The notes under the pieces: model-generated
Told to the model about the DNA's origin: nothing
Seen by the model: the letters and a program-made list of their open reading frames with translations, nothing else
The model's database searches: none
Translations under genes and position numbers: made by a program
Assembly: GCA_044892525.1 (NCBI GenBank)
Contig: CM097888.1
Coordinates: 78,616,001-78,680,000 of the forward strand
DNA from: Schmidtea polychroa
Taxonomy: Eukaryota
Reading direction: 5' to 3'
DNA length: 64,000 nucleotides
Shown: positions 25,595 to 62,345 of the stretch, one piece after another
Layout of the letters: each line of letters begins with the position of its first letter
How positions within the stretch are numbered: the first letter of the stretch is position 1

Positions 25595-25631
25595 GTTTGA
25601 AATTCAGTAATGAAGGACTACCACCCATTGT

Positions 25632-25990
25632 TTATGAACTTCGACTTCCTAATAAACCTGCTCCACCCAATAAATATAATGCAAGAGGAATTAATGCAGC
25701 TATAAATCCTCCTTGTTGTTTATACATAATCTTTCTCATTTGTTTTTTGTTTTTGTAATTTACAAGTGATAGAAGCGATTTCTTGTGTTTTTCCAAAAAA
25801 TATGTTTTCTTGCACTGCTAATATTTATCTTACCATGTACAACTTTCATTATAATATCAAGTAAATCATCTATCACAAATGTAGCGAATGCTTGTAAAAT
25901 TGTTATTCTTGATTGTTTAGGAGCCTTCAGCAAAGAATTAAAATATGGTAAGCTTCTTGTGGTAAGCTCTAGATGCTATAAAATCTTTAG
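25632..25990 (-). pseudogene. Polinton conserved small basic ORF ending in KQQGGFIAALIPLAL, frameshifted
   Basis: The Q-x-GGF hydrophobic C-terminus is characteristic of the small core-protein-like ORF of Polintons. Confidence 0.6.
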
Positions 25991-26155
25991 GTTTTTGTTT
26001 TAATAATTGAAACTCTTTTGGTTCAGTTGTAGCTAGTTTTCAGTGGAATTTTATTTGTAATTTTCCTCTTCTTACGCTTTGCAATCAAATTCTTTAATTT
26101 TTTTGAAGGTTTGACAATTACTTTTTGAAAAGATATTATTAATCTTTTCAATTGA

Positions 26156-26779
26156 TCAACTTTGTTTATATACTGTGTCACCGTTTTTGTTAAATATATC
26201 TGTTCGGACTCGTAATTCATCCGAACATTTTTGGGTAAAGTCTAGAAATAAATATTCATGGGGAATTTTAGTTGCATCTTGAAATACTTCTAGTAAGAAC
26301 TTCCTATTGTTTGTGTATGCTTGTCTTGCTAGAAAATCAATAACTGTTGCATCTCTAGGGTTTTTTAAAATTGTTAGATAATGTACATTAAAATTGCGAG
26401 TTCTATGATTTCCTCCTTGATGGAAAAGATTTTGGGTTATAAAAATAACTGTAACTCCTACATGTCTAGAAATCTTTGTAAACAAATTATTAAATTCCTT
26501 TTCTTTGTTGGCTTCTTGATATAAATCATCAATGATGATGACATCACTCTTTTGTAAACGTTTTGTCCAATCTTTATCAAACCCTTTTATAATTTTCATT
26601 TGAACTTTACAGAATTCTGAATGCGTCAAACCATTTTCAGTTTCTGAACCTCGATGCCAATATATTTGGTTGAATTTTTCAACAAAAAAATTAGACTGGA
26701 GCAATTTACATACAAAAAGCGTTTTACCGCTTCCACAAGAACCGACAATTTGATAAACAGCTTCATTTTGTATTTCCAT
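26156..26779 (-). CDS. Polinton/A32-FtsK-like DNA packaging ATPase (207 aa)
   Basis: Walker A GSCGSGKT, Walker B VIIIDD, SRHVGVTVIFITQNLF, and KNPRD motifs typical of Maverick ATPases. Confidence 0.9.
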   Translation of the reverse strand: MEIQNEAVYQIVGSCGSGKTLFVCKLLQSNFFVEKFNQIYWHRGSETENGLTHSEFCKVQMKIIKGFDKDWTKRLQKSDVIIIDDLYQEANKEKEFNNLFTKISRHVGVTVIFITQNLFHQGGNHRTRNFNVHYLTILKNPRDATVIDFLARQAYTNNRKFLLEVFQDATKIPHEYLFLDFTQKCSDELRVRTDIFNKNGDTVYKQS

Positions 26780-27699: not shown

Positions 27700-27843
27700 G
27701 AAATATATAAATTTTTGCACATTTTGCACATTTTGCACTTTGCACACTTTGCACTTACTTTTTGAAAAGACATATTAATCTTTTCAATTGATCAACTTGT
27801 TTATATACTGTTGCACCGTTTTTGTTAAATATATCTGTTCGAA
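27700..27843 (-). repeat. Second, internally deleted Polinton fragment (TTTGCAC repeats joined to the ATPase 3' end)
   Basis: 27760-27843 is similar to 26121-26208; the TTTTGCAC repeats resemble 27457-27480. Confidence 0.7.
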
Positions 27844-27854
27844 CAGTTTAACTT

Positions 27855-28053
27855 TATAGTTTAACACTTAAATTAGCTATTTTATCGAAAACAAGTTTTA
27901 ACAAATATTTGCCAAATTTTTGTTTGAATTTTTATGTCAATTTTTTATCTTGTTGCATAAATTTTAAAAAATGTATGATTAAATTCAATAAAAATTTTAT
28001 TTAATATTTAAATATAGATGTTCGCTCCTAACTCAGTGGTTCCGATTTACACA
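27855..28053 (+). pseudogene. Duplicated ~200-bp 5' fragment of RBM25 copy 1 (upstream sequence plus the first ~12 codons)
   Basis: Near-identical to 30978-31178, including TAG|ATGTTCGCTCCTAACTC. Confidence 0.85.
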
Positions 28054-28099
28054 AGTATCTACAAAAAATTTATAATTGAACAATGTGCTCTTTGATATC

Positions 28100-28800
28100 A
28101 AGATTATGAAATTTATTTTCAAATATTGGGACAAACTCCAAAAGATTAATATTGGATGTTGAATTGAGTTCAACTGAAATTGAAGCTAAGGTTGTCTCAA
28201 CAATAGCACTCAGCCATCCACAAAAGTGACCTTTACTTCAGGATAGCTATTTTTCGGACGATCCTTGGGTTCAAAGTCTACCGTTGAAAGATTTATTTCT
28301 GATTTCCGACTTATCAACCACATCTTATTAACACTTTATATTCTACTACTCATAAAGGTGGAGTTTGCTTATCCTGTGACTATTCATCGCTATCTCAAAA
28401 ATTGACACATCAATTAGCAAAAGATTGAATTAACTTACTCCATCAAATAATGTTATGATATTTGCAAAACTTTCCAATAAATGGGAAATCATATTCATAT
28501 GTTCACACTTATTTACACCATCGTTCATAATATTGGCACGGATTTGTGTCCGTTCCGAATTTGTTGAAGTCTGAATTCTGTGTTATAATTTGCATGTTTA
28601 TGCGCTATTCTTGATTATATGTGTTCGACCTTACCTGACTTGCATTTATTCTTACTCCATCGTGATAGCGGGCCGATGCAAGTGGGACGATTCCGGCTGC
28701 TACAAATACTGAAGGATCTTATTTTCAAAACGAAGTTTCAACTATTTTGCTTTGCACTGGAACTCATCCCGTTTTTATCTTACTTAACAAAGGTTGTCAT
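28100..28800 (-). pseudogene. Decayed retroelement-like coding remnant (possibly gag/protease)
   Basis: Higher GC and a protease-like LLIDVSIFEIAM segment; many stops. Confidence 0.25.
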
Positions 28801-28975
28801 GAAAGCTGGAGATTAATTTTTCCATTAAATTAAAATATGAACATATAAAAATGTACAGATATTTTTATGTCTTGTTGGCATTTTGGGGAAGAAAAGATAA
28901 CATCAAAAAGTTAGGTCAATAGTCTACACGGGGACATATACCTTCAAATACACTCATTATTATTTCAATTAAAAT

Positions 28976-29112
28976 ATGTGTACCCATGGTATTGTCCATG
29001 TTGGTAATGTACACAATGGTCGAGAGTCAATGAGCAGGTGAGCTCTATAACTAGAACTACTCTCCATTCTACTCTTTATTATAGTTCAGAACTGCTGATA
29101 GAAGGGCTTACA
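28976..29112 (-). ncRNA. Structured repeat, copy D of an unclassified family (possibly an LTR core)
   Basis: TGTAAGCCCTTCTATCAGCAGT...TAGAGCTCACCTGCTCATTG...TGTGTAC-ATTACCAA-CATGG(ACAATA)CCATG-G-GTACACA; homologous to 41969-42115. Confidence 0.55.
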
Positions 29113-29289
29113 TCAATAAGAAACTATCTAATAATGATGTAGTGATTAAGTAGAGTTTCCGGTATTTTAATCAAAGTGAAGTTCCTAATTACTCAATGTA
29201 CAACTACTTAATGTACAATAACTTAAGAAATTTCATAATATGCCTAAAGTTAGTTGTCATTCAACAAACAGACGTACAATAATTGGTAT

Positions 29290-30050
29290 TTAAGATAGAG
29301 AACCCAAAGAACAATATTTTAATTCAAATAGCTAAATATACAATACAAATCAATGTATATGTCAAAATTCTAAAGAAATTTGCATCGGGCTCAGCCAAAC
29401 GCTCCTTTAGGTCGAACAGAGTGTTATTTACTTTCATTATGAAGACTATATTATCGATATTGAGATCCAATTCGGGTGAAATTTCCCTAGGCATGCATCT
29501 GACTCAAGACAGCCACCTTCTTTGCTCTTTGTTTAGCGTTTCTAACCCCCTCCTCTTCTGGTTACGTTTTGGTTTTACTATTGGGGAATTTGCGTTGGGA
29601 CTTACAGCGCACAAGTCAATCATCGGTGGATAAATCTTCGCTCTGGTAGATGGAGCGTGAGGCGATACGAAAGGAGAGATAGAAGATTGCTGATACTCAA
29701 CAAACAGGTTACTGCGCCTGATCAGCTCCGTGTCAACCAGATGGTGGGCCGGAATGAGGTTGGCCTATTCAATGCGGGTTAAAAGCTTTTGAATGTGGCT
29801 TTGTAGTTCCACCTTTGTATAGGCTTGTTACAGGGCATGCGTCTACTCCTGTATTAAGGTCAAAGATTTTCAATGTGGACTCTCGTCTGAATGGTTGTGA
29901 ACCAAACCCTTTCAAGTCGATCTACCGGCCGTCTAGAATTACAGATGGGAGTCAAGAGAGAGTAGAGCCCACTTGTCTGCTTGCACCCAGCCACTGTATA
30001 CAGCACCAACATGGTCAGTTGTCATGAGTATACAGATGGGGTTGGTTTCA
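29290..30050 (-). pseudogene. Orphan ORF remnant upstream of motif D, ending in a hydrophobic segment
   Basis: GC-richer, long near-open frames, e.g. ...LDLNIDNIVFIMK...LAEPDANFFRILTYTLICIVYLAI*. Confidence 0.4.
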
Positions 30051-31141
30051 ATAATAAAAGCCAAGAAAGATATGAGGAACAATGTGCGATTAGATGTGAG
30101 AGAAAATATGTGAATTTTGGTTTTAAAATTTTAAATCTAATATCATTAAAATTTAATTAAGGTTTGTCTGTTGAATTTTTTTACTTGAACTTAACAATTT
30201 ATTAGCATTTTAAAATTAATAAATACAGTATTTGCAGTTCTATTACAACTAACAATCTACTAACAGTAATAAATAATTTGTCTTGTTTTTAATTTAATAA
30301 TTTCGATAGTAAATTAAAAATTTTATTTTATTAAAATGCTTTGTTTATTTTATTTATAAACTTAAAAATTATTTTTCTATTTTTAATGTATTGAATTTTT
30401 AAGTAAAGTTTCATAATTAATATTGTTGATTATACATTAAAGTAAATCGTCATAGTAACAAATGAAATTATCGATAAGCTAAAATGTATGTTCATATATA
30501 AATAATGGTTCACAAAATGATAATTTATAAATAGCTAAAATATATATTTTAGACAAATTTTGATTAATTTTAATTACAAAATTAATAATAATTTCACAAT
30601 AAATTGTTTATGAAAGATTATTATTAAAATTTAGTCTTAACCTACTTTAAAAAGTTAAATATTGTAAGTTGTAATTTTAAAATGTAATTTAAAAGATTAG
30701 TTTTCTGCTATATCATTACTTTTATACGTTTTATAATTAATTTATTTTTAAATAAAGTTTTGAAATTTAATTTAATTTTAAGTTTTGTCTTTTATTCAAT
30801 TTTTATATATAAATTATATATAATTTTAATTGTTTTGATAAAAATTGTCACAACAATAAAAAAAATTGGTGAATTTGCAAGGTACCGCACCTGAATTAAT
30901 TTATTCGTTAAGAAAAGATCAATATTAAAGTTTTGGTATTATAATACTACTCTTTATTTTGAAGGAAATATGTGCAATATAGTTTAACACTTAAATTAGC
31001 TATTTTATCGAAAACAAGTTTTAACAAATATTTGCCAAATTTTTGTTTGAATTTTTATGTCAATTTTTGTATCTTGTTGCATTAATTTAAAAAAATGTAT
31101 GATTAAATTCAATAAAAATTTTATTTAATATTTAAATATAG

Positions 31142-34100
31142 ATGTTCGCTCCTAACTCTGTGGTTCCGATTTACACAAATGTTCCCCCACCAGTTATTTA
31201 TCCAGCTATTAGTAAATAAATATTTATTAATTAGTTTTATTCATTTTTAATAAATAGACAATTCCCCTGTAGTTGCATTGTTTATCAGCAACATATCTGA
31301 AAAAATCCCAGATCCAGCAATGAAAACTATTTTAGATGTAAAAAATATTTTATTTTATGTATATTATTTGAATGATTATGCTAGAAATGTGGAGAAATAT
31401 TGAACTGGAAGCGAGTTCAAGGAGCATCTGGTAAATTACAAGCTTTTGGTCTTTGTGAATATGAAAATCCAGAAGCTACATTGCGTTGTATTAGACTACT
31501 AAATGGATTGAAAATTGCTGATAAATCCCTGTTGGTATGTGATTGTATTTATTTTCCAGATCTATAAAACCCAATGAATTCAAGGTGAAAGTTGATCCGA
31601 AAACCGATGAACTATTAAAGGAGTATTTAATGAAAGTTAAAAAAACAATTGATGAAAAATACGAAAATTTATCCGAAGAAGAAAAGCAAGAAAAAATTAT
31701 ACAAATTGATACGAAAAGAAACAATGAAGATAAAGTTTGTTTGAGTGATGTTAAAAAAATTCTCGAAGACATCGGATTAGAATACAAATTAAATGAGATT
31801 GGTAAATGATTCTTTCTCTGGAATTTTATTATCGTCTGCCACTAGGAAACTCCGAAGCAAGTGAAGAGACGAAAAAACCCGAAAAAACTCCCGTTTGAAA
31901 ATTATCTCTCAAATAAACAATTGATTTTGATAATTTTAGACGAAGGAAGAAAGCAATACCAAAAAATCGATATCAAAAGAAATCGAGTCGATTAGGAATA
32001 AACGCAGGGTATGATTATTGATTTTTAGATTTCTGTTAAAATGTCGAATTTTGATTGGTGGAATTTTCCCCATTGATTTTCTATTTCACCCGAATTATTA
32101 TTAATTGCTATTTTAATCGGTTTACGATTGCTAATATTTTTTTAATTTGGTTTCAATTTAATTTAATCCTTTCTAATGGTTTTTGTTGTGAAAATAATTT
32201 GAAATTAAAATTATATAAATAAGATGCTCGGTCTCAATGGAGGTTAACTTTGGATACTGAAACAAATGGTCTGTCATTGAAATACCATTCAGAATGTGCT
32301 TATAATGATTTGTTTTTGATCTTTGCGGCTGTTACTCAGTCGGGGTGCATGTGAACCCCGATATTAATCCGTTGGACCCTGTCAACAATTTTGATTTGTA
32401 GCAATATCGGCTCTTATGGGAATTTTACGGTTTCTAATGACTTTGAGTTTGGTTAGAAATGGCCTTGAAAACGTAACCAATAACTATATTATTATAGGAT
32501 AAATTCATCGAAATATTATTTAATCATATACTATAATAATCCAATAATCTGCTAGCTCAAATTTGATATCTGTTTTACGCCGGCTAGTCGAATTATACCG
32601 AGACAATCTCAAACTAGGAACCTTAGGATCCCTAATATATTTATCAAAGGCCGTTTTCATCATTAATAAAAATAATTTTCAATGCCCATTTGTCATTAAC
32701 AATTCAACCAATTTATCAACAATTTTTACTGAATTTGCAAAAGTACAGTATAAAAACCAAGAATGATAAATCAATTCTTTCACAATTGAATTGAAAAGTT
32801 CTTTTCTAATTAACTAATTTTCCTCATGCCTATTGCAATTGGTACAATATGACAATAATATTTGCAACACTGAATATTAAAACAATTTGTGGAGTTATCA
32901 ATTTGATAACGTTTCAAGGCTCTTTTCTGTTTTGCCATTAAAACATCTTCATGAAATAATCACAACTATTATCTTTCTTAATTGTCACCTATCATTGATA
33001 TTCGGTACCGAATTATAATCCCAACTAGTTTATAAGACATTCCTGGATTTGGATATCAAACTTTTGCATGTATTAGGAAACCTTAAATTTGGTCAATTCA
33101 ATCTTTTTCACTCATTTAGCTTCTTGCATTCAATGAAATAATTTTCGTATTGACACAAACTGAATTAATGTTAAACCAAACGAAGAATAAAAATATAGTA
33201 TAATTATCGATTAAATGTATAATTATTTGAAAATTAATATATTTAAAATGGGTCTCGTCGTAAATGTTCTAGAATAGCGATACTGACGACGACGGTCACC
33301 GTTCAAAAAAATTGAAGAAAAATGAAAGAGATAGGCGTAGTAAAGACAAGCATGAATCCCGTCGACATCGGAGTAAATCACGATCTAAACCAGGTAATCG
33401 TACAAAAACTGATGACAGGCGAAAAAGACATTCGAGTATGATATTTTTAAAGGGAAATTTTCGAATTAACGTTTAAAAAGAAAGTCCTGCTAAAAACCAA
33501 CGTTCCAATTCTAAAGACTCTCATAAAAGTTTAAAAGTCAACAAAACTTCTGAAAAAGAACTAGATGAATACGAAGCAGCTGTATTTTTATCATTTCAAT
33601 GGTTTTTAAAATTGATTTTGAAATAAAGGTTTTCAAGAGATTAGAGAAAAAATTACGAGATAAAGAAGCCTCTTATCAAAAAAGACTTCAAGCTTGGGAG
33701 TTAAGAGAAAAGAGACAGACAAAAGATTATTTAATCGAGGAAGAACGAGAAAAATCTAAGAAAAATGATCTTTCCGACGAAGCAAAAAAATTGCAAATAT
33801 TCTTTGAAGAATATGATGATGAAGTATCGGATGCTAAATACTACATGTAATAATCTTCTGTACATTTCGATTTTCCCCAACGTACATTTTTAGGAATTCT
33901 GAACTCGAACGACGATGGGCTGCTAGACAAACTGAAGAATCGACTGACGCAAAAGACAGATCGAAGGAAATAGAACAAATTGAAAATACTCGCCGTCGTT
34001 TACTCAAAGAAAACAATCCTGACGTCGAGGAAGTCATTTTAAAAATGGAGCAATCGATGCAAGAACATTTGAAAAAACGATTGATTGACAACATTGACGA

Positions 34101-34955
34101 AACTTTAGTTCCAATTAAATTCGAAAAAGAAAATGTGCCCAATGATATTAGTAAATTGGAAAAGCGAGAGGCAATTCCATTGGAGGATGACATAAACGAA
34201 CATGACCTGTTGAACAATAATGTTGTAGATAAACTGGCTGTTGTTGTTGTTGATGATGGAGCAGAAAAGGCGTGTGACAGTGATTTGAAGCCCTTGGAAA
34301 TTCAGAATAATTCCAATTGCCCTACCGATGCTATCAAGTCTGTTGATGCCGAGACCAGTAAACATGGGAGCCATGAACAATTATTGCTGCCATGTGATGA
34401 GAAAAAGCTACCAGAAGATGAAAGCAATCCAAACGACAGCAACTCAAATCCATTGAGCACTCCTGATAAAATCGATAGAAAAGTTATGATGAAGAAAATA
34501 ATCGATGCTATTCCAACATCGAAAGAGGAGCTGTTTTCCTATAAAATCGAATGGGACATGATTGATGAGGTGATTTGGAGTTTTTTGTTGTTGATGATTT
34601 TTAACTCGCCACTTTTCGTTACACAATCGATTTTAGAATTTTGTCGAAATGAGCATGAAGCCTTGGATTAATAAAAAGATCATCGAGTATATCGGAGAGG
34701 ACGAACCGACATTGTCGAAATTTATCTGCGATCAAGTATTGGAGCATAAAACTCCCGATCAAATACTTGACGATATTTCAATGGTAAATCAATATTGTCC
34801 AAATAATAAAAGTTCATTTATTCTACATTTTATGGTAATATTTTTCTCAGGTGCTGGAAGAAGAGGCGGAAATATTTGTCATGAAAATGTGGCGTTTGTT
34901 GATCTATGTTATTGAGGAGAAAAAAATCGGCTTGGTAAAATGTAATTTCTCGTGA
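31142..34955 (+). CDS. RBM25: RNA-binding motif protein 25 paralog 1 (RRM, RE/RS-rich region, PWI domain)
   Basis: WKRVQGASGKLQAFGLCEYENPEATLRCIRLL; KPWINKKIIEYIGEDEPTL; VLEEEAEIFVMKMWRLLIY; short GT-AG introns. Confidence 0.9.
32300..33148 (-). mobile_element. Decayed non-LTR retrotransposon (CR1/L2/Jockey-like) AP-endonuclease fragment in an RBM25 intron
   Basis: KIISLNARS*MSEKD*IDQI*GFLIHAK / FDIQIQECL resembles the APE N-terminal NARS...DI..I.E motifs. Confidence 0.55.
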
Positions 34956-35334: not shown

Positions 35335-35752
35335 CTATGGGAAACAATTTTTATCAAATTCCGGCTCGAACTCCTTGTCATCCGGCCGGACTTGCTCTCG
35401 TTTTCTTGGTTTGCCATACTTTGCCGTCCGATTTGACGGAATGATTGCTCCTCATACATTACCGCTTCGTGCCACGGTTGGAAGTGGTTCCATAGAGACC
35501 AGCTGCCCTACCACTACTTCGTCTACTGTTCACTGATTTATTTGACGTCCTAAGCTCCACCTGGTCTTGGGTACTCTGCTCCTGCAGCTGTAGGATATGT
35601 TGCAGACGTCACATCATATTCGCTGGGCGGAACTATGTGTGTTTCATCTCACGGCACTGGTACTTACGTTTATCGACGTGGCACTGTAGTTTCTAGACAG
35701 CCCACTGAGCTGCTTCCCTGCATGCTCTCAGGCTTTCCATCAGTCGTAACAC
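35335..35752 (-). pseudogene. Decayed orphan coiled-coil ORF, homolog of 40457-41056
   Basis: FRPANMM*RLQHILQLQEQSTQDQVELR aligns with FPPAEMQKRLKLISQLQLQSAQDQVELR. Confidence 0.65.
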
Positions 35753-35959
35753 TGAAATAAACGCAATTGAATAAAACAGTAATGATAACAAAATTTTTAA
35801 CAATCGCGGAAATGAAACTATATTGTTTAATTTTTTCCGACATCTGAAAGGCCCCTCTATATTTATCTTTAACCCGCTTTAATCGCTGGGGTTGGTCGTC
35901 ATGTGTTGGACACCATCTTTTCACATCGCAATTGAGTTAGTATTTCTAAAAACAATTAC

Positions 35960-40456: not shown

Positions 40457-41056
40457 GGACTAATCCGGGGTTTAACCACACTTCAAAGACTACAGCTTGA
40501 CGATCGCATTTTGTATAACGATAATTATAGTAACAAGCCATAGTCGCCTGACGAGATTATGGAAAGATACGTCATTAATTATACCTTTGATTTAGTGCTA
40601 AAGCTCTTGGAAGATATGCGCCGGGACCGGGAACGAGCGCAACAACAGACGGAAGTGTATAGGGCCAAGCTGACGAGGATCAAAGAACATTGCAGTAACT
40701 TCGAAAATAAATAGTTCCCGCCGGCGGAGATGCAGAAGCGCCTGAAACTGATTTCCCAGTTACAATTGCAGAGTGCTCAAGATCAAGTCGAACTACGAGC
40801 TCTCCGTCTGAGGGTGAGGGAACTCGAGACCCAGATACATAAACAGGAAATCGATCGAGATATTATCGCCAAGGTTCCACCTCTGGCAGAAGTACTTCAC
40901 AGACCTAAAGTACTCGCATCTTCTATTCCCCCTTGGAAGAAAATCCGGCCGGGCAAGGCTGCTCGGGCCAGATTACGTCAAGCCAGCTTAGTCCAAGGAT
41001 CAACCAACTTGACTCTACCAATAACCACCTCGGAAAAGTCCACTGGAGCATTATGA
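40457..41056 (+). pseudogene. Orphan coiled-coil ORF (two in-frame stops) upstream of motif A
   Basis: LLEDMRRDRERAQQ...QLQLQSAQDQVELRALRLRVRELETQI; heptad-like composition; homolog at 35335-35752. Confidence 0.6.
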
Positions 41057-41151
41057 ACTCCCACTATAGTCATGTGATTTAAATAAAAGTGTTTTTTGAT
41101 GACTCATGTGCCTGTATGTCTTCTGGTTATTCGAGAACTCAATTAATACAG

Positions 41152-41385
41152 AGGGACCGAAAGAAATCGGATATAAGCCTTCTATCGGCAGTCCGTGAAC
41201 CCAAGCGAGTGCTAGACAATTATAGTATGCTAAGCATGCTCACTTTTTGCTAGTACTCAAACCCTTGGTACAGTACCAACGTTGATTGCTCAACGGGTAC
41301 CAAGTGGTCAGCTGTCAATTGTATTCTGGGTTACACTGGAAACAGCACGAGTAAATAGAAACTTTGGATTGCCTGTAACCCACCA
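41152..41385 (+). ncRNA. Structured repeat, copy A of the unclassified family
   Basis: Three stem domains that covary with copy B; ends GTAACCC-ACCA. Confidence 0.6.
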
Positions 41386-41968
41386 GTAATGTAATTTTAT
41401 GAAAGACATGAATTGATGTAATTTTATTATTAATAAAATTTTTAAAATTGGATTTGTTTTAGTTATAATTTTTTTTATGTTTTGTTTTCTTTAATGGTTA
41501 CCTTATTTTTGCATTTTGAATAACAATCATAATTTACATAAATATTATTTGATCTGGTGCTATGAATCTTCATGTGTTATTGATGTTCTAGATTGAACAG
41601 AATGTTTGTGGGCGGATGGCACTTGTGCTGTTGGTCGACAGATGTTTTCGCTAGTTTCGTACATAGGACATATTTAGCGATAGGATCGAAGGAAAATATA
41701 AAGCCATTTTAGTCGGTTTGAAGCTTTGTCTAAATCTAGATAGTATAGGACGAATTCGTTTTTAGTAAGACATAGGTTGGAATTGGAAATATTGGCAGAT
41801 CCCTACTCAAATTTTATGAGGAGTATGAAATTACATTTAATAGTTTAGAAATAAAGGCCAATCTTTGCTCAAATTTTTGAAGAGAACCATAGAAAACATT
41901 TAGTAACGAGGACCATAGATAATTGAACATATGACAACACTAACAATAGAATAGATAAGGAATTATGA

Positions 41969-42170
41969 CGTAAGACATTCTATCGGCAGTCTAGGACTCG
42001 TAAGGAAAATACAATGAGGAGTAGGTTTAGCAATAGAGCTCACCTGCTCATTGTTTTTTTACACCTTTGTGTACAGTACCAACATGTCGTTGCCATGGGT
42101 ACACAAATGGTGTAAAGTGTAATTGTCATGGAGGCGCTTAGGAAAGAGTCGATGGAATATCTATGATTAC
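41969..42170 (+). ncRNA. Structured repeat, copy C of the unclassified family
   Basis: TTCTATCGGCAGTC; ACAATGAG/CTCATTGT stem; TTTGTGTAC-AGTACCAA-CATG..CATG-G-GTACACAAA. Confidence 0.55.
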
Positions 42171-42312
42171 ACCTAATGTGTTAAAAATTTAAAATGACAC
42201 ACCCCTAAGTGACCAACACATGGATCAACTCCCTTAGTGGATCAGACATTGATAGGTAATATAGGAAAGGTGAAAGTCAAGTAGTAAGTGCACATCAGGC
42301 AAATAATGCCAA

Positions 42313-43249: not shown

Positions 43250-46200
43250 ATGGCATATCCGAATCAGTCTCCTCATATGTATCCATATATTCCTCCTCCA
43301 TATATTCATCCTCCAATTGGTTCGTAATTTTTATAATATTAATTTTATAAAAAATACATCTTAGGTATTTCTATTAGTACAGCCACCCCAGTTATAATTC
43401 CAAAACCACAATTACCAACCACTGTATCTAATACTGAAACTAATCAAAAATTTTCAGTAAAATTCTAAACTTATTTATTAATAAATTATTATTAGTCTTT
43501 TGAGCGTCCAATCACAACAGTTTTTATCGGTAATATTTCCGAAAAAATTTCAGATTCGTTGATGAAAGATGTTCTTGCAGTAATATCATAATCATATTTT
43601 ATTATGTAATATTTATATATTAGAAATGTGGTAATGTATTGAGTTGGAAAAGGGTACAAGGAGCGTCTGGCAAATTGCAAGCTTTTGGATTTTGTGAATA
43701 TGATAATCCAGAAGCAACTTTGCGTTGCATTCGGTTATTGAATGACTTTGCTATTTCTGATAAAACTCTTGTTGTAAGTATAATTGATTATTTAATGCTT
43801 ATTATTTTTTACACAGGTAAAAGTTGATCCTAAAACCGACGAATTATTAACAGATTACAAAGGTAAAAAACAGAAAGCTATTGAAGATAGAGAAGCTGAA
43901 GACGTAACCCGAACAGAAGAAGAAAAAAAAGAACGAATTAATTTGATTTATGCTAGAGAAGCCGATGAAGATCGAAATGCTTTGAGTCAAATCAAAAAAA
44001 TAATCAAAGAAGCTGGCTCAGATTTGGCAACAAATGAAAAAGGTAAATCTTTTTGATATTTTTGTCAATTGTTAATTTAATTTTTTCAGAAAAGAAAGAC
44101 AAGAAATCAGAAAAAAATGAACCAATGAAAGGCTTGGTAATGAATTTTTGTAATTTGGTTGAAATTCAATAAAATAAAAATTCTAGAATATTGATGATGT
44201 AGATTTGGATGGAGATAAGAAGAATTTAATTTCACGAGAAATTGAAATATTTAGAAATAAACATAAGGTAAATATTAATTGAAATTTTATATTGGGATAT
44301 TGCGGATAATTATTTAATAAAAAAATTGAGCGAAAAGCAAATTAATTAAAATTATTTAATTTAATTTTGTGATCGTTGATTGAACCTGTTAATGATATAA
44401 ATATAATCGATTGAATGGGATTTAACTATTTCAATAAAGGATGATGAAATTAATGAGGATAAAGAAGAGCGTTATAAAAGAATAAGGGAACGAGACAGAG
44501 AGAAGCGCAGAGAACGTGACAGAGAGCGTAGTAAAGAAGTAAATCGACATCGTAGACATAGAAGTAGATCTAGATCAAAAGCAAGCCGTCAGCCTAATGA
44601 AGAAGAACGACAACGGAAAATATCTAGAGCAGATTCGAGTATGCCTTGGTTATTATATTAATTGTCTTATTTATTTCTATATGAAGGAAGTTCCTCTATA
44701 ACATCTAAGAAACGAAGATCTGGTTCCAAAGATACTCAGAAAAGTTCCAAAAAATCAAAAAAGGATTCCGATAAAGAATTTGATGAATATGAAACTACGG
44801 TAGGGATTTTAATTGATAATGTGAAAAGTATTTAAATTCACGTAAAGATGTTTAAACAATTGGAGAAAAAACTCCGAGACAAAGAAGCAGCCTATCAAAA
44901 ACGCCTTCAAACTTGGGAGGCAAGAGAGAAAAAACGACTCAAAGATTACGAAACGGAAAAAGAGAGGAACATTTCCAAAGAGAACGAAATAGCCGAGGAA
45001 GCAAGAAAGCTGCAAATATTCTTTGAGGATTATGACGATGAAAAGTGGGACTCGAAATATTACCGAGGAACGGAATTGGAAAGACGCTTAACTGCCAGGC
45101 GTACAGAAGAAATGGCAGACGAGAAAGATCGAACGAAAGAAGTTGAACAAATTGAAAGTACCCGACAAAAACTATTGAAAGAACACAATCCGAATGTTGA
45201 GGCCATCATACTACGAATGGAACAATCTATGCAAGAACACCTGCAGAAGCGATTGAAATTCGATTTTGATTCAATGCCTGTTGTTAGTGATGACACCAAG
45301 CCGTGTTTCATGACTCCAGAATCAAATACGGTTTTAATTTAGTATTGGTTTTGTTATTCTCAATTTGTCATAGATAATGAATAATTCATCATCAGAAGCG
45401 GTTTCCCCGGGAGACGGCGCTTTTCCCATTAAAACCGATATGGAAATATCAAATACCAACAATGACCATCAGATATGTTTCGCTAATGAAGTGAAAGTCA
45501 ATATTAATGATTCCTGTACGGATGGCAACCAGAAAGGATTAAATGGTTATTTATATATAAATGGTAATATTCCTATTTCATTACAGATTCATTCAAACCA
45601 ATGATTCTACCTCCACAACCAACCGTCCCGATTGCTGCTGGACAGATTTCCGAGGATAATGCCGAGGATCACAACGGAGTAAATCACAAATCTGCCCATT
45701 CTGGAACATCGATTCCTCACACAGAAAGGAAATTACTCGTCAAGAAAATCATTGACGGAATTCCAACAATTAAAGCCGATCTCTTTGCTTATCCGATTGA
45801 ATGGGATACGATAGATGAAGTTATTATTGATTATATTTTATGGCTGATTTTGGTTCCTCTCTTTAAACTTATTCTTCGGACAATTCCCTTCTAGGCTGGA
45901 ATTTCCGGCTTAATTATATTTTTATTACAATAAATAGGAAATGGTAAAAGGATAAATTATTGAATATCGGAAGCAATTTAATTANNNNNNNNNNNNNNNN
46001 NNNNNNNNNNNNNNNNNNNNNNNNNNNNNNNNNNNNNNNNNNNNNNNNNNNNNNNNNNNNNNNNNNNNNNNNNNNNNNNNNNNNNNNNNNNNNNNNNNNN
46101 NNNNNNNNNNNNNNNNNNTTTATTATTAATTTTTATTAGCAATATTATTATTTATTTTTATTATTTTTTATTTTAATTATTATTATTATTATTTATTATT

Positions 46201-46901
46201 AATTATTATTAGTATTTATTATTAATTTTTATTAGCAATATTATTATTATAATTATTTTTATTATTTATATTAATATTATTATTAATTATTATTAGTTAT
46301 ATTGTTATTATATTAATTTTTAAAATTAATTTTTGTCTTTGTATGTCATCTGCAGTTATCACTTATTTTTGTCAATGATTACAGATTATTTGTAACTGAA
46401 AAGGTAAATAAAACTTGTGTAAAATTGTTTGAAAAATAAACAATTTAAAAGAAGTATAATTTGATCAAAAATTGTTGCTTTCCTGTTAAAAGCATTTGTT
46501 ATGAATGAATTTTCTAATTTTTTGTCACATATCGATTTGGTAAATTTCGCTAATGATTAATTTTTTTGATTTTGTCAATGCTAAAAGTAAATTCAAAAAT
46601 TTTCCTAGAGTTTTGTTGAGACTCGCATCAAACCATGGGTTGATAAAAAAATCGTCGCATACATCGGCGAGGAAGAACCGTCTCTATCGAAGTTTATCTG
46701 TGATCAAGTATTGGATCATAAAACCCCTGATCAAATTCTCGCTGATATTGCAATGGTGATTTTTTTGTATATACTTGCCACATATAATGTCCTAATTTCG
46801 TTGTTAAGGTACTGGAAGAAGAAGCTGATGTGTTTGTCATGAAAATGTGGCGCTTACTGATTTATGTTATTGAAGAAAAAAAGGCCGGTTTGGATAAATG
46901 A
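43250..46901 (+). CDS. RBM25: RNA-binding motif protein 25 paralog 2 (more canonical); an assembly gap lies in one intron
   Basis: TTVFIGNISEK, SWKRVQGASGKLQAFGFCEY, ISREIEIFR, RE/RD repeats, KPWVDKKIVAYIGEEEPSL, VLEEEADVFVMKMWRLLIY..KKAGLDK*. Confidence 0.93.
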
Positions 46902-48983: not shown

Positions 48984-49320
48984 TGTTGGGCTAGAACCGA
49001 GAATTAAGAGTTTGTTTTAACCACGCTTTGGCTTTCACATCTGTTGTTTCTGTTTCTTTGACGTTTCCCACAATGTCTTTGCTTCTGCCACTAAAACACA
49101 TCGCTAGCGCTTGTCAATCGCTTTCCATTTGTCAGCAACCATTCTTCTATATCCCTGATCCATTCTTCGGCTTCTTTTAAACCTCGTCCATCATATCGTC
49201 TGATGTTCAGGGTGAGCATGTCTTGGCATGATTTCGGTAGGCATTCCATTAGCGATTTTGTCGATTTCGAAATGGCATTGATATTTTTATTTTCGGCGTG
49301 GTCGCCAGTTAAATCCATCT
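48984..49320 (-). mobile_element. Gypsy gag fragment joined to an LTR 3' end
   Basis: IRRYDGRGLKEAEEWIRDIEEWL is a gag-like motif; it is followed by ...TTCTCGGTTCTAGCCCAACA. Confidence 0.55.
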
Positions 49321-49714
49321 TTATATTTCTCAACAAAAATCTTGAAACCAACAATATATATTTAATCAAAAGAATTTATAAATAATAAGTTTTTAATTTT
49401 TCACAAAATAAGAAAAATATTGATCTATAGTCTAAATCTAAATGAAGACAAATGAAATTCTAACGGAAAAATAGATTGCAAATTAATTAGAAGCTCAATG
49501 ACAAATAGCAAATGACAAATAGCAAAATTAAAATTTAATTTATGAATAATAATTTTCTAATCCAAAATCCTTATTTATTTTCGAAACACATTTTGATAAT
49601 ATGAAATAATTTAAAAAATTTTCAAATTATTTTTAAAGAAATGTGATTGTTTAAATTATTTTACTTAACTTTTGTTTGTAAAAACTTTAGATTTTAATTT
49701 AATTTTCACCTATT

Positions 49715-52700
49715 ATGAAAACATTCCATGTAGTGTTGTTTTTTATTTTCCATTTTCTACAAACAGGTAATTATCTAAATTTCTTTTTTTAGATTTAATA
49801 GTCAGAATTTTTTATTATAATTTTATTCTTTTGTAGAAGTCTCCGCATTTAATATAAGTTTCAGTGCGCCTCATAGTTTACCGATAAAACTCAATGGTAA
49901 TATAGTGCTCACTTGTAAATTACCAAACACCTCAAAATTGCCTTTGCTTATTCAAAGAAACGATGATTTAGTGTCAGAAAAATGTGATGTTTATTTGAAA
50001 AACCTTTATGGTATTACCTGTAAAAATGACACAGAATATAAATTTAAAATTAAAAAGATGTCTTGGATTGATAAGGGTAAATGGAGTTGTATGGTTGGTG
50101 GTTATAGTTCAAGCATTATGTTGGATATATATGGTAATTTTTTTATAAATTTTTAATTAATTAATTTTAAATAAATATAATGTATGATGTAATATTTAAT
50201 AAAATTAATTAGTTCCCAGTAATGTATCAATTTTAATTGAACCAATATCCAAAAAAGTATTTTCCTCCAATTTGGGACCTGAATCAATTCCATCGAGTCA
50301 TGAAAACTCGATCATATTAAGAGGTAGAGGTAAAAGATTGAATCCTTATGATTTGAGAAAAAATATATCCGTAAATCTAATTTGTAAATCCGATTGCAGT
50401 TATCCAGCAGTTAATCACATGTTTATTTTTAAAAATTTTTTAAATGTAAGCTTTGATTTTTATTTGAAATTAAATGGAAATTCATTCAAACTAATAGTCG
50501 AATTTCTCAAAGGAAATCAGTAAGGAGTCAGATAATGTTGAAAGAAATATATGTGATATTGAACGAAATAAGTCGTTAACGATGACCAAATTGAAATTCA
50601 ATTGCAAAGAATTTAAATTGACAGGATTAATCAATCTCACCTGTTCAACATTTGACGTTAAACGCTCGATATTTAACATTTCCCAACGTACTATTTATAT
50701 TTTATGTCCAAGTGAGTGATTTGATAATATTTAAATGGATTAAATATTATGTAACTTTTAATTAATTTTTAGAAATAATTAATTATTGAATAATAAATAA
50801 TTGAAATTTGATTATGAAAATTTATTTATTTGAATTTAATTATTTATAAATTTTATTATTGTGCTTTATATATTTTTATTTTTATTTATAGAAATAATTA
50901 TTAAATTAAAATAAATTAATTTAGTGGTTTTTTAATGTAATTTAAATTTATGATTTTTGTGATTTAAATGAATAATTTCCTGAAATTATTTAATTATTTA
51001 ATTAATTTTAATTTAATTAAGCTGTACATATTTATATAAAGAAAAAAATTAAATTTAACTTGATATTATTTTTTTTATATTAAATTAAATATTAAATAAA
51101 TAATCGCATAAATTAAATTAGATTTGGTTATGAAGATGCAATTTTTAAAATTTAAATTATTATTTATAATTTTTTAAAATTTTAATTCATTTTAAATAAT
51201 CATTATTTTCTTTTTTATTTTGTTATTTATTATAATTTAATTATATAAATATTTTTATATTTAAATTATTTTAATTTATAGAAATAATAAAATATTAAAT
51301 TATATTTTAGTAATTAATTACTATCAATTAATTTTCCCCCTCTTAATTGTTTAATTTAGTTTTATAGTTTTTCTGTTATTTATTTAAATTTGATTAATTT
51401 TATATATCAATTTCCCGAAAACTGCTAATAATTTCATTTAATTATAATTATATTTTTTAGTTATTAAATTATAAAATGTTTTTATTGATAATTTTTCATG
51501 AAAATGTTATTTAATTAAATTTTAGTTGTCTGTAAATAAAATATTTATTATTATTTAATTTCTTTTTAATTTTTATTTATTAATGATTTTTTTCAGTTAT
51601 TTAGAATTTAATTAATTTCATATTTTTTTTTAATAATTTAATTTGTATATTTTTTATTTAAAAAAAATTATTAATTATTATTTATTAAAATTTTAATTTA
51701 ATATAATTATTTAAAATTTTTATGGATATTTGGGTAAACAATGCTGAATTTATTATTATAATTATTATTATTATTATTATAGAAGTAAAAAATTATTTAT
51801 ATTTAATTTAATTTAATTTTTTTATTAATTAATAAAATATTTATTATTCATTTTAATCATTATTTAATTGATAATTTTTCATGAAAATGTTATTTAATTA
51901 AATTTTAGTTGTCTGTAAATAAAATATTTATTATTATTTAATTTCTTTTTAATTTTAATTTAATATAATTATTTAAAATTTTTATGGATATTTGGGTAAA
52001 CAATGCTGAATTTATTATTATAATAATAATAATAATAATAATTATTATTATTATTATAGAAGTAAAAAATTATTTATATTTAATTTAATTTAATTTTTTA
52101 TTAATTAATTAAATATTTTTTATTCATTTTTATCATTATTTAATTGATAATTTTTCATGAAAATGTTATTTAATTAAATTTTAGTTGTCTGTAAATAAAA
52201 TATTTATTATTATTTAATTTCTTTTTAATTTTTATTTATTAATGATTTTTTCAGTTATTTAGAATATAATTAATTTCATATTTTTTTTTAATAATTTAAT
52301 TTGTATATTTTTTATTTATAAAAATTATTAATTATTATTTATTTATTAAAATTTTAATTTAATATAATTATTTAAAATTNNNNNNNNNNNNNNNNNNNNN
52401 NNNNNNNNNNNNNNNNNNNNNNNNNNNNNNNNNNNNNNNNNNNNNNNNNNNNNNNNNNNNNNNNNNNNNNNNNNNNNNNNNNNNNNNNNNNNNNNNNNNN
52501 NNNNNNNNNNNNNNNNNNNNNNNNNNNNNNNNNNNNNNNNNNNNNNNNNNNNNNNNNNNNNNNNNNNNNAATTGATAATTTTTTCATGAAAATGTTATTT
52601 AATTAAATTTACGTTATTTTTAATTATATATTTAATTGTTTATAAATTTTATGACAACTGCTAATAATTATTTTCAGAAATTCATTTAATTAAAATCATA

Positions 52701-59368: not shown

Positions 59369-59838
59369 AGGAAATTTGATCTGTGTTCTTTTTTTGATAC
59401 TGTTATTAAACTAAGTCATTTGAGAGAGTCCATGGTGCAATTTCAGAACTGAAATGTTTATATTTAGGACGTACAAATAATTTGGATTTTTTTTACGAGT
59501 AATTATTTGTAAATATTATGCTTTATATTGATGTGATGCTTTGCGATGAATCATTTTGTGCTTTGTTTTATTCTTGTATTTTGTACTTTTAACAGTTGTA
59601 CATTCCCATTTTATTGACGGCTTTAGTGAATTCCAACTCTCTCTCTCTCTCTCTCTCTCTCGCTATATATACATATATATTTGTATACTATTTTAATAGT
59701 GCATTTTGATTTTTATATAATTTTAATAAATTTATTTTGAATTCTGATTTTTATTTTATTCATTTTTGATAAAAATTACTTTTTTAGGAAAAATTAAAAA
59801 CGCTAGATAATTGATGAATTAAAATATATAATCGTACA

Positions 59839-60058: not shown

Positions 60059-60787
60059 TAATATGATCATACGCCATGTAATACAAAATGAAGTACTTAA
60101 CACGTGTAATTTGTAAAATGGAATGCAAGCAACATCTTAGTTAAGAGACAAATGAATGTAAGTTCCAAAGAAAAAGTAGACCAAAAAAATGAATTTAAAA
60201 ATTATGTAGGAATTTTGGCCGTATTTACATATGAAGAAGCTATGAAAGAGAGTGCAGAATTTAAGGAAAATATGAAAGAAATATTTTAATAAATACTCTT
60301 TGTTTTAAACAACTAATAAAATGTGTGATATCGATTAAAGCGTGAGTATAGTGAAAAATGATTAGGATCATGTTCATATTTTCCCCCTATACCGTGTCTA
60401 AATAGCAAAAAAGTCTCTGACGAAATAACGTGGGATGAGGAATGAATAGGGTCTCTGCTGTTTGCACATTCACGTATGAAATGATTAAGCATTCAAAAAT
60501 TAATCTTCGTAATAAGTTTCTAATAAGCAGGTATAGTTGTTGATCCGTGAGGGAATGAACAGAAATTCCTCATAACCCAATAAGGCTAGATTGGGATGGC
60601 AGACAGCGCTTGAAACGACTCCGCAGTCGCACCAGGATCATCACAACCCAACTCAACTCACGAACAATAATGTGATGATATAAAAAGAATGTCAATAAAA
60701 TTGTTGCAATTTTTTACCAGTATGTTGCATGTTAGCTTGATGAGGCAGCGTGGAAGAGTTATGAAACTTGGGAAAATCATTAAATTA

Positions 60788-61018
60788 AGGGACCGGAGCA
60801 AATCGGACACACATCTTCTATCGATAGTCCGTGAACCCAAGGAGTGCAAGACAATTTTAGTGCAAATAGTGCGCTCACTTTTTGCGAGCACTCACCCTCT
60901 TGATACAATACCAACGATGATCACCTACCGGGTATTAAATGGTAGAACTGTTATTGTATTCTGGGTTACGCTGGAAACAGCTCGACGAGGTAAAATGTTT
61001 CTTACCTGTAACCCACCA
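60788..61018 (+). ncRNA. Structured repeat, copy B of the unclassified family
   Basis: Colinear with copy A with compensatory substitutions in several stems; ends GTAACCC-ACCA. Confidence 0.6.
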
Positions 61019-62345
61019 ATATAAATAAATTGAACTAGTAACAGTTGTTGTGAATTATTGCCATCGTTATTCTGTGTGCTATTACAAAGAAATTTTTAAT
61101 AAAAATTTTCTCTTCCTGATATTATATCGTTGTTTAACTAATTTATTATCGTCCCCTAGAACTATTTTTCTAAGGTTTAAATATTGCTGATGTTATCGCC
61201 GAATAAATATGGACAGAAATTACCTAACCAGTTAAACAATATACCGAAGACAATCAATGAAAAATCATGTCATTATTATAAGAATTCTTTGTTTTATATT
61301 GAATTTTTTATTATTTTTTTATCTTTCGTAATTAAAAAAAAGAAATTATTACAAAATTGCATAATAAATTTCGATTAGCGTAGGTTAAACTAAATGAATA
61401 AAAACCACTCGAAAAAAGAAGTATCGAAAATTCGTGTTAAATATTAAATTAAATCTACAAAAAGAAGCCGTGAAAATAACATAAAATGGAAAAATCCATA
61501 GCGAAAAAGATAAGATATTTTACTGATAATTGAATTTTTAATTATTTAGTCGGACAAATTTTTGTATTTTTCTTTAAATTGGACTGTGGTGGTCTTTTTC
61601 CTTAAGTACATATTATAAGTTTGGGAAAATGACGTTCTATGGATTGATTGTATGCTTTTACTTCTTTTATATAATTTTTACATAGGTTTTTAAATTAATT
61701 AAATTAAAGGATTAAAAAGAACGAGAGGAATTCGCGATTTTTGTAAAATAAATGAAAAAATCTAAGTGCAATCTATTAGTTAATTTTTGTATCTATTGCA
61801 TCTATAGTTAAAAGTCAAATTATAATTAAATTTTATTTATTCAAATAATAATCTTCTTGCTAATATTATTCTAACAAAATCTTCAATAATATAATGAATA
61901 AATAGTGAATTCGATCAAACCGCATTAGAAGAAATCGCTAATAATATTAATTAATTCAATAATTCACTTTAATTAATTAGCTTAATTACATTCTCACACT
62001 ATCCATGATGGAATTGACCATGTTTAAAAATATATGATGAGAACTTCCGTAAATTATTGTTGTAAACTTCATGAATACTCCTCATGGAAAAATAAATTTT
62101 AATCTGATTTAATTAAAATTTTATATTCCAGTACTACATGCAAAATAAAATAAAATAAATAAAACTAAAGAGATTAAATATAAAGATAATCAGAAACGTT
62201 TTATTAATTTGAAAAAAATGTCTTAAAGGTTTAAAATCTAGTCTAAGGGAAATATTGGCTAACTAATTGCATATTTCCTAATGATGAATTCTAGATAAAG
62301 AATAAATTATACATTTTCAATTAAAACATTAACTTTATTGTCAGA

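What the first reader, a model, noticed from the sequence alone, without database searches (positions are those of the whole stretch)
41152..41385. Unclassified multi-domain structured RNA conserved by covariation in four diverged repeats (A 41152-41385 +, B 60788-61018 +, C 41969-42170 +, D 28976-29112 -)
All four copies share: (i) a 5' box TTCTATC(G/A)(G/A)(C/T)AGT; (ii) domain 1, a long stem (GAGTGC/GTACTC in A, GAGTGC/GCACTC in B, CAATGAG/CTCATTG in C) holding an inner hairpin always closed AG...GCT and followed by CAC (AGTATGC/GCATGCT, AGTGCA/TGCGCT, AGTTCTA/TAGAGCT); (iii) domain 2, a stem that covaries (TTGGTAC/GTACCAA, TTGATAC/GTATTAA, TTGTGTAC/GTACACAA) around an invariant asymmetric loop A-N-TACCAA / G and a variable hairpin. 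A, B and probably C add a three-way junction with a GAAA arm. G-U pairs and the GNRA loop fix the strand. The TAC-A-N-TAC duplication allows an alternative pairing, i.e. a possible switch. Invariant unpaired bases amid covarying stems are typical of a catalytic or protein-binding RNA. It matches no ribozyme, snRNA or tRNA class I know. It may be the conserved core of Gypsy-type LTRs (three copies begin (T/C)(G/A)TAAG), or a new ribozyme or replication signal.
Basis: partly seen in the sequence, partly recalled or inferred. Interest (0 to 1): 0.85.

Follow-up and report, generated by a model that had tools for sequence, protein, structure and literature searches.

The report
Structured short interspersed repeat family
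The window holds six diverged copies of a non-coding repeat of about 165-240 bases whose hairpins are kept by compensating base changes; it is most likely a small retroelement-like (SINE-like) RNA family, and there is no sign that it is a ribozyme or a Gypsy LTR.

Summary
The four copies exist, and I found two more: E (29888-30042 +) and a decayed fragment F (28197-28321 -).

- **Repeat unit.** A and B are discrete units of about 235 nt with sharp ends and unrelated flanks. The repeat is non-coding and matches no Rfam family, even at E<=10.
- **Domain 2.** 13 pairs, 95% of cells paired against 25-47% when the partners are slid, and 6 pairs changed on both sides.
- **Domain 1.** The inner hairpin has 26 of 28 cells paired, with 2-3 pair types at four positions.
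- **Strand.** G.U pairs outnumber A.C 11 to 2 on the + strand, which favours a + strand RNA. Folding energies alone are modest.
- **3' domain.** The three-way 3' domain is clear only in A and B. It ends in a 7-8 bp stem followed by A-CCA, exactly where the A/B similarity stops.

The tested LTR, MITE, tRNA and hammerhead features were not met, and I found no target-site duplications.

Best reading (about 0.5): copies of a non-autonomous retroelement-like RNA whose fold is what its copying machinery recognises. The main rival (about 0.25) is a structured RNA element that the host maintains.

No relatives could be retrieved from outside the window, and Dfam/Repbase could not be consulted. The class therefore stays unresolved.

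The parts
41148..41388 (+). Copy A, long type, best preserved. 5' hairpin 41156-41170, 5' box 41180-41192, domain 1 41207-41258, domain 2 41264-41304, three-way 3' domain 41328-41381 followed by A-CCA 41382-41385.
   Evidence: BLAST to B 76.7% over 240 nt; model R1 143.9 bits; whole-unit fold z -3.36 on + against -1.40 on -; domain folds; all counted pairs of domains 1 and 2 intact.
60784..61021 (+). Copy B, long type. 5' box 60816-60828, domain 1 60842-60893, domain 2 60899-60939, three-way 3' domain 60963-61014 followed by A-CCA 61015-61018. An accidental 111-aa ORF (60689-61024) runs through it.
   Evidence: 141.3 bits; 3' domain z -4.06; the ORF has no homologues and no exact match on record; several stem pairs broken compared with A.
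41948..42174 (+). Copy C, short type, 560 nt downstream of A. 5' box 41978-41990, domain 1 42006-42059, domain 2 42067-42106. The 3' part 42119-42174 has a different closing stem and ends A-CCT; its homology to domain 3 of A/B is uncertain.
   Evidence: 144 bits; domain 1 z -3.66; 3' part z -0.43; 3' part does not align with A/B.
28969..29135 (-). Copy D, short type, closest to C. 5' box 29091-29103, domain 1 29023-29075, domain 2 28976-29016. Similarity ends right after domain 2.
   Evidence: 75% to C over 145 nt; 156.6 bits.
29888..30042 (+). Copy E, newly found, short type. The 5' box is degenerate, the inner hairpin of domain 1 is missing (29947-29987), and domain 2 (29994-30035) has a fully paired 8-bp outer stem of a different sequence. 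It lies about 1.2 kb upstream of the first RBM25-like paralogue, as C does for the second.
   Evidence: 122.8 bits.
28197..28321 (-). Copy F, newly found: a decayed fragment resembling the 5' part of the long type.
   Evidence: BLAST to A and B 74-75% over 43-44 nt; sequence; model R1 12.5 bits, E 0.03, although F was not used to build the model.

Best explanation
These are copies of a small non-autonomous, retroelement-like (SINE-like) RNA family with two subtypes: long (A, B, F) and short (C, D, E).

The unit is transcribed from the + strand. Its RNA folds into a 5' hairpin, a long irregular hairpin (domain 1), and a two-helix hairpin with an invariant 8-nt asymmetric loop (domain 2). In the long type there is also a Y-shaped 3' domain, whose 7-8 bp closing stem is followed by a single A and CCA at the very end of the unit.

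The fold and the invariant unpaired boxes would be the surface that the copying machinery, and perhaps stabilising proteins, recognise. Lineages that kept the fold kept multiplying. That would explain why stems differ between copies by compensated changes while the boxes stay fixed.

**Shown:**
- a repeat family with discrete ends and unrelated flanks
- both orientations, with truncated and decayed members
- non-coding
- covariation in domains 1 and 2
- a G.U bias for the + strand

**Inferred:** transcription, an RNA intermediate, copying by a partner element's reverse transcriptase, and the role of the 3' stem-ACCA end.
For: - Six copies in 64 kb, on both strands, in three places. They include a 3'-shortened copy (D), an internally deleted one (E) and a decayed fragment (F).
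- A and B share sharp boundaries, and their 300-nt flanks are unrelated.
- D is more like C, which lies 12 kb away, than like its neighbour E, so copies have moved or been copied between places.
- Non-coding: A and C have stops in B's frame, and B's ORF has no homologues.
- Pairing is conserved with double changes. G.U versus A.C is 11:2 on the + strand, so the selected molecule is a single strand of + sense, as expected for an element that passes through RNA.
- The window is otherwise rich in mobile-element debris: piggyBac, a Maverick fragment and a gag-like ORF.
- Copies are 35-48% G+C in a window of roughly 25%.
Against: - No hallmark of retroposition could be shown. Target-site duplications are not above chance. 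The tail after ACCA is only AT-rich, like the background. No RNA polymerase III head was recognised: no tRNA, no Rfam hit for tRNA, 5S or 7SL, and A-/B-box-like matches only at chance level. No partner LINE sharing the 3' end is in the window.
- Copy number outside the window is unknown. No relative was found in any collection I could reach.
- The copies differ by 20-40%, yet their stems are still 90-95% paired, and conservation along the unit is very uneven. Dead copies drifting neutrally should look more evenly decayed. This fits selection at each locus, that is, a host function, at least as well.
- E and C sit at matching distances upstream of two old paralogous genes.
- Dfam and Repbase could not be searched.
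Confidence: 0.5

Rival explanations
1. A host-maintained structured RNA family. It is either a cis-acting element carried in 3' UTRs and intergenic transcripts (for example for RNA processing, localisation or protein binding), or a small non-coding RNA gene family with pseudogenes. On this reading the copies arose by local and segmental duplication and are kept by selection in place.
For: - Stems stay 90-95% paired although copies differ by 20-40%, and conservation is concentrated in boxes and helices.
- A and B each begin about 100 nt after the stop codon of a + strand ORF, in sense orientation.
- E and C lie 1231 and 1353 nt upstream of the two RBM25-like paralogues, while everything between them and the genes is unalignable.
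- The 3' domain of B mimics a stacked acceptor/T-arm helix followed by A-CCA, a shape that tRNA-processing enzymes recognise (established knowledge; not tested here).
Against: - The copies stand in both orientations.
- D is closest to the distant copy C, not to its neighbour E.
- Decayed and shortened members exist (F, D, E).
- Upstream flanks of A and B share no promoter-like similarity.
- No Rfam family matches.
- The ORF before A has a second decayed copy with no element after it, so that adjacency is not a fixed unit.
Confidence: 0.25
2. Terminal repeats of a small LTR-type element (solo LTRs, or a miniature TRIM-like element made of A + spacer + C).
For: - Discrete units of about 235 nt.
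- One direct pair (A, C) 560 nt apart.
- A and B end in ...CA.
- There is a purine-rich stretch in the first 20 nt of A and before C.
- A gag-like ORF lies elsewhere in the window.
Against: - The units do not start with TG where the A/B similarity starts.
- A and C are among the least similar pairs, so they are not the two LTRs of one insertion.
- No primer-binding site follows A and no coding capacity lies between the pairs.
- In the other cluster the neighbouring copies D and E are inverted.
- No target-site duplications were found.
Confidence: 0.07
3. A DNA-level feature: palindromic protein-binding modules, or the remains of a DNA transposon (MITE-like), with no role for RNA.
For: The stems are inverted repeats that fold about equally well on either strand in domain 2. 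The consensus fold of the - strand alignment even scores slightly better.
Against: - There are no terminal inverted repeats joining the two ends of a unit.
- Half-sites for one binding protein should stay the same across copies, not change in a compensated way.
- G.U outnumbers A.C 11:2 on one strand, and one U.G wobble is kept in three copies. Double-stranded DNA has no reason to show that.
Confidence: 0.08
4. A new self-cleaving or otherwise catalytic RNA carried by the repeat.
For: There are invariant unpaired nucleotides between covarying helices. Several retroelement families are known to carry ribozymes (established knowledge).
Against: - No match to any ribozyme family in Rfam at E<=10.
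- No hammerhead core.
- No pseudoknot or nested core could be supported with six sequences.
- Invariant loops are equally expected for protein binding.
Confidence: 0.04

Closest known systems
SINEs with conserved body domains (the CORE-, V-, Deu-SINE type of organisation) and SINE/LINE pairs whose 3' stem-loop is recognised by the LINE reverse transcriptase ('stringent' type)
   Same: Short (about 165-240 nt), non-coding, dispersed in both orientations, modular (shared 5' and central part, different 3' part in the two subtypes). Conserved boxes sit among variable stems, and the 3' terminal structure is strongly conserved (the last 14 nt are identical in A and B).
   Different: No tRNA-, 5S- or 7SL-derived head was recognised. 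There is no clear A-rich or simple-repeat tail, no target-site duplications and no partner LINE in the window. Copy number is unknown.
Alu/7SL-type conservation of RNA fold among repeat subfamilies
   Same: Compensatory changes between subfamilies keep the helices, while individual copies carry scattered unpaired decay (B, C, D, E).
   Different: No similarity to 7SL/SRP RNA (Rfam). The fold is of a different kind.
tRNA-like 3' ends ('genomic tags') of RNA replicons and retroplasmids, and tRNA-like pieces cut from long non-coding RNAs
   Same: In A and B a 7-8 bp terminal stem, stacked in B on a 6-bp hairpin, is followed by one unpaired A and CCA exactly at the end of the unit.
   Different: There is no cloverleaf (ARAGORN and Rfam negative) and the domain is only about 56-58 nt. 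It is well formed in B only, and C ends A-CCT with another stem. The CCA could be chance, since it rests on three bases in two copies.
Non-LTR retrotransposon 3' UTRs that bind their own protein (R2-type), and short internally deleted derivatives of them
   Same: About 200-250 nt of multi-helix RNA with little sequence conservation but a conserved fold. There is no poly(A), and the unit has a defined 3' end.
   Different: There is no ribosomal DNA target and no adjacent reverse-transcriptase ORF. The 5' ends of the copies coincide, instead of being variably truncated.
Terminal-repeat retrotransposons in miniature (TRIM) and solo LTRs
   Same: The size of the unit, and one direct pair with a short spacer.
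   Different: The termini, the similarity within the pair, the primer-binding site, the polypurine tract and the duplications were tested and not met.

Membership tests
SINE (non-autonomous non-LTR retroposon) | Short (80-600 nt), non-coding, dispersed copies in both orientations | tested here: met
   Six copies of 125-240 nt on both strands in three places; no conserved reading frame.
SINE (non-autonomous non-LTR retroposon) | 5' head derived from tRNA, 7SL or 5S RNA with an internal RNA polymerase III promoter | tested here: not met
   ARAGORN finds none. Rfam gives no hit at E<=10.
SINE (non-autonomous non-LTR retroposon) | Target-site duplications and an A-rich or simple-repeat tail | tested here: inconclusive
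   The best flank matches are 6-9 nt, no better than random places in the window. The sequence after the unit is AT-rich, like the background. The copies are old, so the duplications may have decayed.
SINE (non-autonomous non-LTR retroposon) | High copy number; partner LINE sharing the 3' end | not testable with these tools
   The source genome and its relatives are not in any searchable collection. No LINE is present in the window.
LTR of a Gypsy-type or TRIM element | Unit bounded by TG...CA with short inverted termini | tested here: not met
   The A/B similarity starts at AGGGACC (41152 / 60788). The unit ends in ...CCA.
LTR of a Gypsy-type or TRIM element | Two near-identical direct copies flanking an internal region with primer-binding site, polypurine tract and (for autonomous elements) gag-pol | tested here: not met
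   A and C are of different subtypes and share only short boxes by BLAST. The 560-nt spacer has no ORF and no TGG-type site after A. D and E are inverted, and Pfam finds nothing between them.
LTR of a Gypsy-type or TRIM element | 4-6 bp target-site duplication | tested here: not met
MITE / DNA transposon remnant | Terminal inverted repeats at the two ends of the unit | tested here: not met
   No inverted repeat joins the ends of any copy.
Known RNA family (Rfam 15), including hammerhead, HDV-like, twister, snRNA, snoRNA, SRP, RNase P/MRP, 7SK, viral tRNA-like structures | Score at or above the family's gathering threshold | tested here: not met
   0 matches at gathering over the whole window. 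Copy A alone gives nothing at E<=10. The C and B regions give only chance-level hits (18-19 bits against thresholds of 55-100).
tRNA or tRNA-like structure | Cloverleaf or acceptor/T-arm mimic ending in a discriminator base plus CCA | tested here: inconclusive
   The acceptor-like 7-bp stem + A + CCA is present in A and B and is stacked on a 6-bp hairpin in B. But there is no cloverleaf, the second hairpin is not kept in A, and C differs.
Conserved structured RNA (general) | Helices kept by compensatory changes beyond controls; strand-specific G.U | tested here: met
   Domain 2: 95% paired against 25-47% when slid, 6 double-change pairs, 0/500 shuffles. Domain 1: 26/28 and 27/30 cells paired. 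G.U to A.C is 11:2. Caveat: there are only 4-5 sequences, and the domain 1 alignment was made by hand.

The most novel reading that the evidence does not exclude
The repeat is a so far undescribed class of structured RNA, either carried by a mobile element or maintained by the host. Its invariant loops and its acceptor-like stem-A-CCA 3' end would form a new recognition or processing module, for example a tRNA-mimicking end used for priming, 3' end processing or protection, or even a new ribozyme core.
Probability: 0.15. Interest if true: 0.75.

Novelty: new member of a known kind. Interest (0 to 1): 0.4.

Why it matters
If this is a SINE-like family, it adds one more example of a mobile RNA whose fold, rather than its sequence, is what selection keeps. 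It would also be a family without a recognisable tRNA, 5S or 7SL head, which would be useful for repeat annotation of an AT-rich arthropod-type genome.

If instead the copies are kept by the host, it would be a new structured RNA element placed next to genes, with a tRNA-like end, and that would deserve proper study.

Either way the covariation is real. The element is a good seed for a covariance model with which to annotate the source genome.

Tried and rejected
1. **Coding region.** B carries a 111-aa ORF, but A and C have stops in that frame, and the ORF has no homologue or exact record.
2. **Known RNA family.** Rfam gave nothing at gathering thresholds, and nothing relevant at E<=10 in three sub-regions.
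3. **tRNA-derived.** ARAGORN found none.
4. **Hammerhead core.** Absent.
5. **Fixed unit of the upstream coiled-coil ORF 'X' plus the element as its 3' UTR.** X has a second decayed copy with no element after it. A stretch downstream of that copy that I first took for a seventh element copy turned out to be part of the X coding sequence. B has no X-like sequence upstream.
6. **Part of the neighbouring Maverick/Polinton.** Full relatives fetched from ENA assemblies contain no copy.
7. **Relatives elsewhere.** A motif scan of JGI metagenomes gave one chance hit in phage-like coding DNA, and viral contigs gave none. Protein searches with the neighbouring ORF found only one 638-nt contig that ends 21 nt after the stop codon.
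8. **Literature.** A search for the motifs as text, and for the ENA accession numbers, found nothing relevant. A search on SINEs and tRNA-like ends returned general papers that I did not read.
9. **Target-site duplications.** At chance level.
10. **Structural aligner.** MAFFT Q-INS-i is not installed, so the domain 1 alignment was made by hand from coordinates.

Full report
**Setting.**
- The window is very AT-rich: 15-40% G+C in 2-kb bins.
- It looks like an arthropod-type nuclear genome. Myosin heavy chain rod exons lie on the - strand at 62.3-63.7 kb, and their best matches among solved structures are insect myosins.
- Two paralogous RBM25-like genes lie at 31.25-34.9 and 43.5-46.9 kb, and there is a TBC-domain exon.
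- Mobile-element debris is present: a piggyBac transposase piece, and a Maverick/Polinton packaging-ATPase ORF with an integrase-like piece.
- The species itself is not in any collection I could query.

**The observation.**
- The four copies are real. The 5' box is exact in A, B, C and D, and the loop motif of domain 2 likewise, both far above shuffled expectation.
- A and B align at 76.7% over 240 nt, and C and D at 75% over 145 nt.
- Following near-matches of the motifs, I found a fifth copy, E (29888-30042, +). It lacks the inner hairpin of domain 1 but has a perfectly paired domain 2 of yet another sequence.
- I also found a decayed sixth copy, F (28197-28321, -), which resembles the 5' part of A/B.
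- A covariance model built from A-E and run over the whole window with filters off returns the five copies at 123-157 bits and F at 12.5 bits (E 0.03), and no further match with E below 0.2.
- The copies fall in three places: F, D, E at 28.2-30.0 kb; A, C at 41.1-42.2 kb; B at 60.8-61.0 kb.
- There are two subtypes: long (A, B, F) and short (C, D, E).

**Limits of the unit.** The A/B similarity starts and stops sharply at 41152-41388 and 60788-61021. The 300 nt on either side are unrelated: upstream 174/500 and downstream 24/500 shuffles score as well. The unit is therefore a discrete piece of about 235 nt, not the end of something longer.

**Not coding.** B is spanned by a 111-aa ORF, but A and C have stops in the same frame, and the ORF has no homologue.

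**Structure.**
- *Domain 2.* On an alignment made by the tool (A6), the 8+5 pair structure has 95.3% of cells paired, against 25-47% when the 3' partners are slid by 1-3 columns. Six pairs have changes on both sides, and 0/500 shuffles reach the covariation score. By inspection of A6, one outer-stem pair is G-C in A, C and D and A-U in B and E, that is, changed twice independently. Three more pairs differ between the subtypes in a compensated way.
- *Domain 1.* Counted on a hand-made gap-free register, the inner hairpin has 26/28 cells paired. The first two pairs are invariant, a U.G wobble at pair 3 is kept in A, B and D, and pairs 4-7 each show 2-3 different pair types. The basal stem has 27/30 cells paired.
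- *Strand.* Across the counted helices, G.U occurs 11 times on the + strand. A.C, which would be G.U on the other strand, occurs twice. This is the best evidence that a + strand RNA is what is selected.
- *Energies.* They are less telling. The whole unit gives z -3.36 (A) and -1.88 (B) on +, against about -1.4 on -. Single domains range from z -4.1 to +1.2 and hardly separate the strands. The automatic consensus fold of a sequence-only alignment is poor and slightly better on the - strand.
- *3' domain.* It is convincing in B: a 7-8 bp closing stem, a GAAA hairpin and a 6-bp hairpin, z -4.06. It is acceptable in A (z -2.36). It is not supported in C (z -0.43; the 3' parts of C and E do not align with A/B).
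- *The 3' end.* In A and B the closing stem is followed by one A and CCA, and the similarity ends there. The last 14 nt are identical. In B the geometry resembles a stacked acceptor/T-arm helix.

**What it is not.**
- No Rfam family matches at gathering thresholds or, for copy A alone, even at E<=10. There is no tRNA and no hammerhead core.
- *LTR features fail.* There is no TG start. A and C are of different subtypes, not a matched pair. Nothing like a primer-binding site, polypurine tract or gag-pol lies between pairs. D and E are inverted. There are no duplications at the flanks.
- There are no terminal inverted repeats.
- It is not part of the neighbouring Maverick.
- It is not a fixed 3' UTR of the small coiled-coil ORF that precedes A. 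That ORF has one in-frame stop relative to its only homologue, P0001. A second, more decayed copy lies on the other strand and has no element after it.

**What it most likely is.**
- The pattern is that of an interspersed repeat: a discrete short unit, two subtypes, both orientations, shortened, internally deleted and decayed members, and a copy (D) that is closest to a distant copy (C) rather than to its neighbour (E).
- Selection on a single + strand points to an element that lives as RNA.
- I therefore read it as a SINE-like, non-autonomous retroelement RNA whose fold and invariant loops are recognised by the machinery that copies it (confidence about 0.5).
- The steps from 'structured repeat' to 'retroposed' are inferred. 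I could show no target-site duplication, tail, polymerase III head or partner element, and no copy outside the window.

**Main rival.**
- The copies differ by 20-40%, yet their helices remain 90-95% paired, and conservation is sharply uneven along the unit. This would also be expected if each copy is under selection where it sits.
- A and B each start about 100 nt after a stop codon, in sense orientation.
- E and C lie at like distances (1231 and 1353 nt) upstream of the two old RBM25-like paralogues, while the rest of those spacers cannot be aligned.
- A host-maintained cis element or small RNA family therefore keeps about 0.25.
- An LTR/TRIM origin, a purely DNA-level feature and a new ribozyme are minor options.

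**Limits.**
- There are only 4-6 sequences, which are related by descent, so the shuffle controls overstate significance.
- The domain 1 register was set by hand.
- Dfam, Repbase and SINEBase were not available.

Noticed in passing
window 25301-26779 (- strand); relatives L003-L006: A Maverick/Polinton-type fragment. It has an uninterrupted 207-aa packaging-ATPase ORF (26156-26779; Pox_A32 relatives, best 78% identity) and an integrase-like piece (25301-25594); no other genes of the element were seen nearby. Relatives of 14-16 kb in ENA assemblies (ERZ227xxxx series) carry PolB, an integrase with chromodomain, and TBP-like and Bcl-2-like genes.
   Followed up: partly
window 18027-18371 and 18752-19057 (- strand): Pieces of a piggyBac-type transposase (PF13843, E 8e-19 for the first ORF).
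   Followed up: partly
window 31254-34942 and 43508-46900 (+ strand): Two paralogous RBM25-like genes, with 65-72% nucleotide identity in their exons. Copies E and C of the repeat lie 1231 and 1353 nt upstream of where the paralogy begins.
   Followed up: partly
window 27855-28054 and 30978-31178: A 201-nt direct repeat, 98% identical, brackets the 2.9-kb stretch that holds copies F, D and E. A further 100-nt repeat (92%) links 26110-26209 with 27748-27844. This suggests a recent local duplication or insertion; it remains unexplained.
   Followed up: no
window 40559-41056 (+) and about 35549-35770 (-); L001: A small coiled-coil ORF with no Pfam domain. Its only homologues in 1.8 billion representatives are P0001 (67% identity over 135 aa) and one weak hit. 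The + strand copy has one in-frame stop relative to P0001. The - strand copy is decayed (several stops). It is either a lineage-specific gene family or an unknown repeat.
   Followed up: partly
window 1190-3010, 46119-46345, 50730-52380, 10200-11100: Very AT-rich, satellite-like tandem or dispersed arrays that match each other at 65-75%. Two of them border assembly gaps (runs of N).
   Followed up: no
window 57767-58218 and 59838-60064: A repeat of about 230-250 nt that matches itself in both direct and inverted sense (77-78%). It is fold-back or MITE-like and lies just upstream of copy B.
   Followed up: no
window 49091-49369 (- strand): A 92-aa ORF that looks gag-like by eye, but has no Pfam match at E<=0.1.
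   Followed up: partly
window 41391-41426: Directly after copy A an 11-nt motif (TGTAATTTTAT) occurs twice, 25 nt apart. After copy B there is a short TAAA-type run. These could be remains of simple-repeat tails, or just AT-rich background.
   Followed up: no
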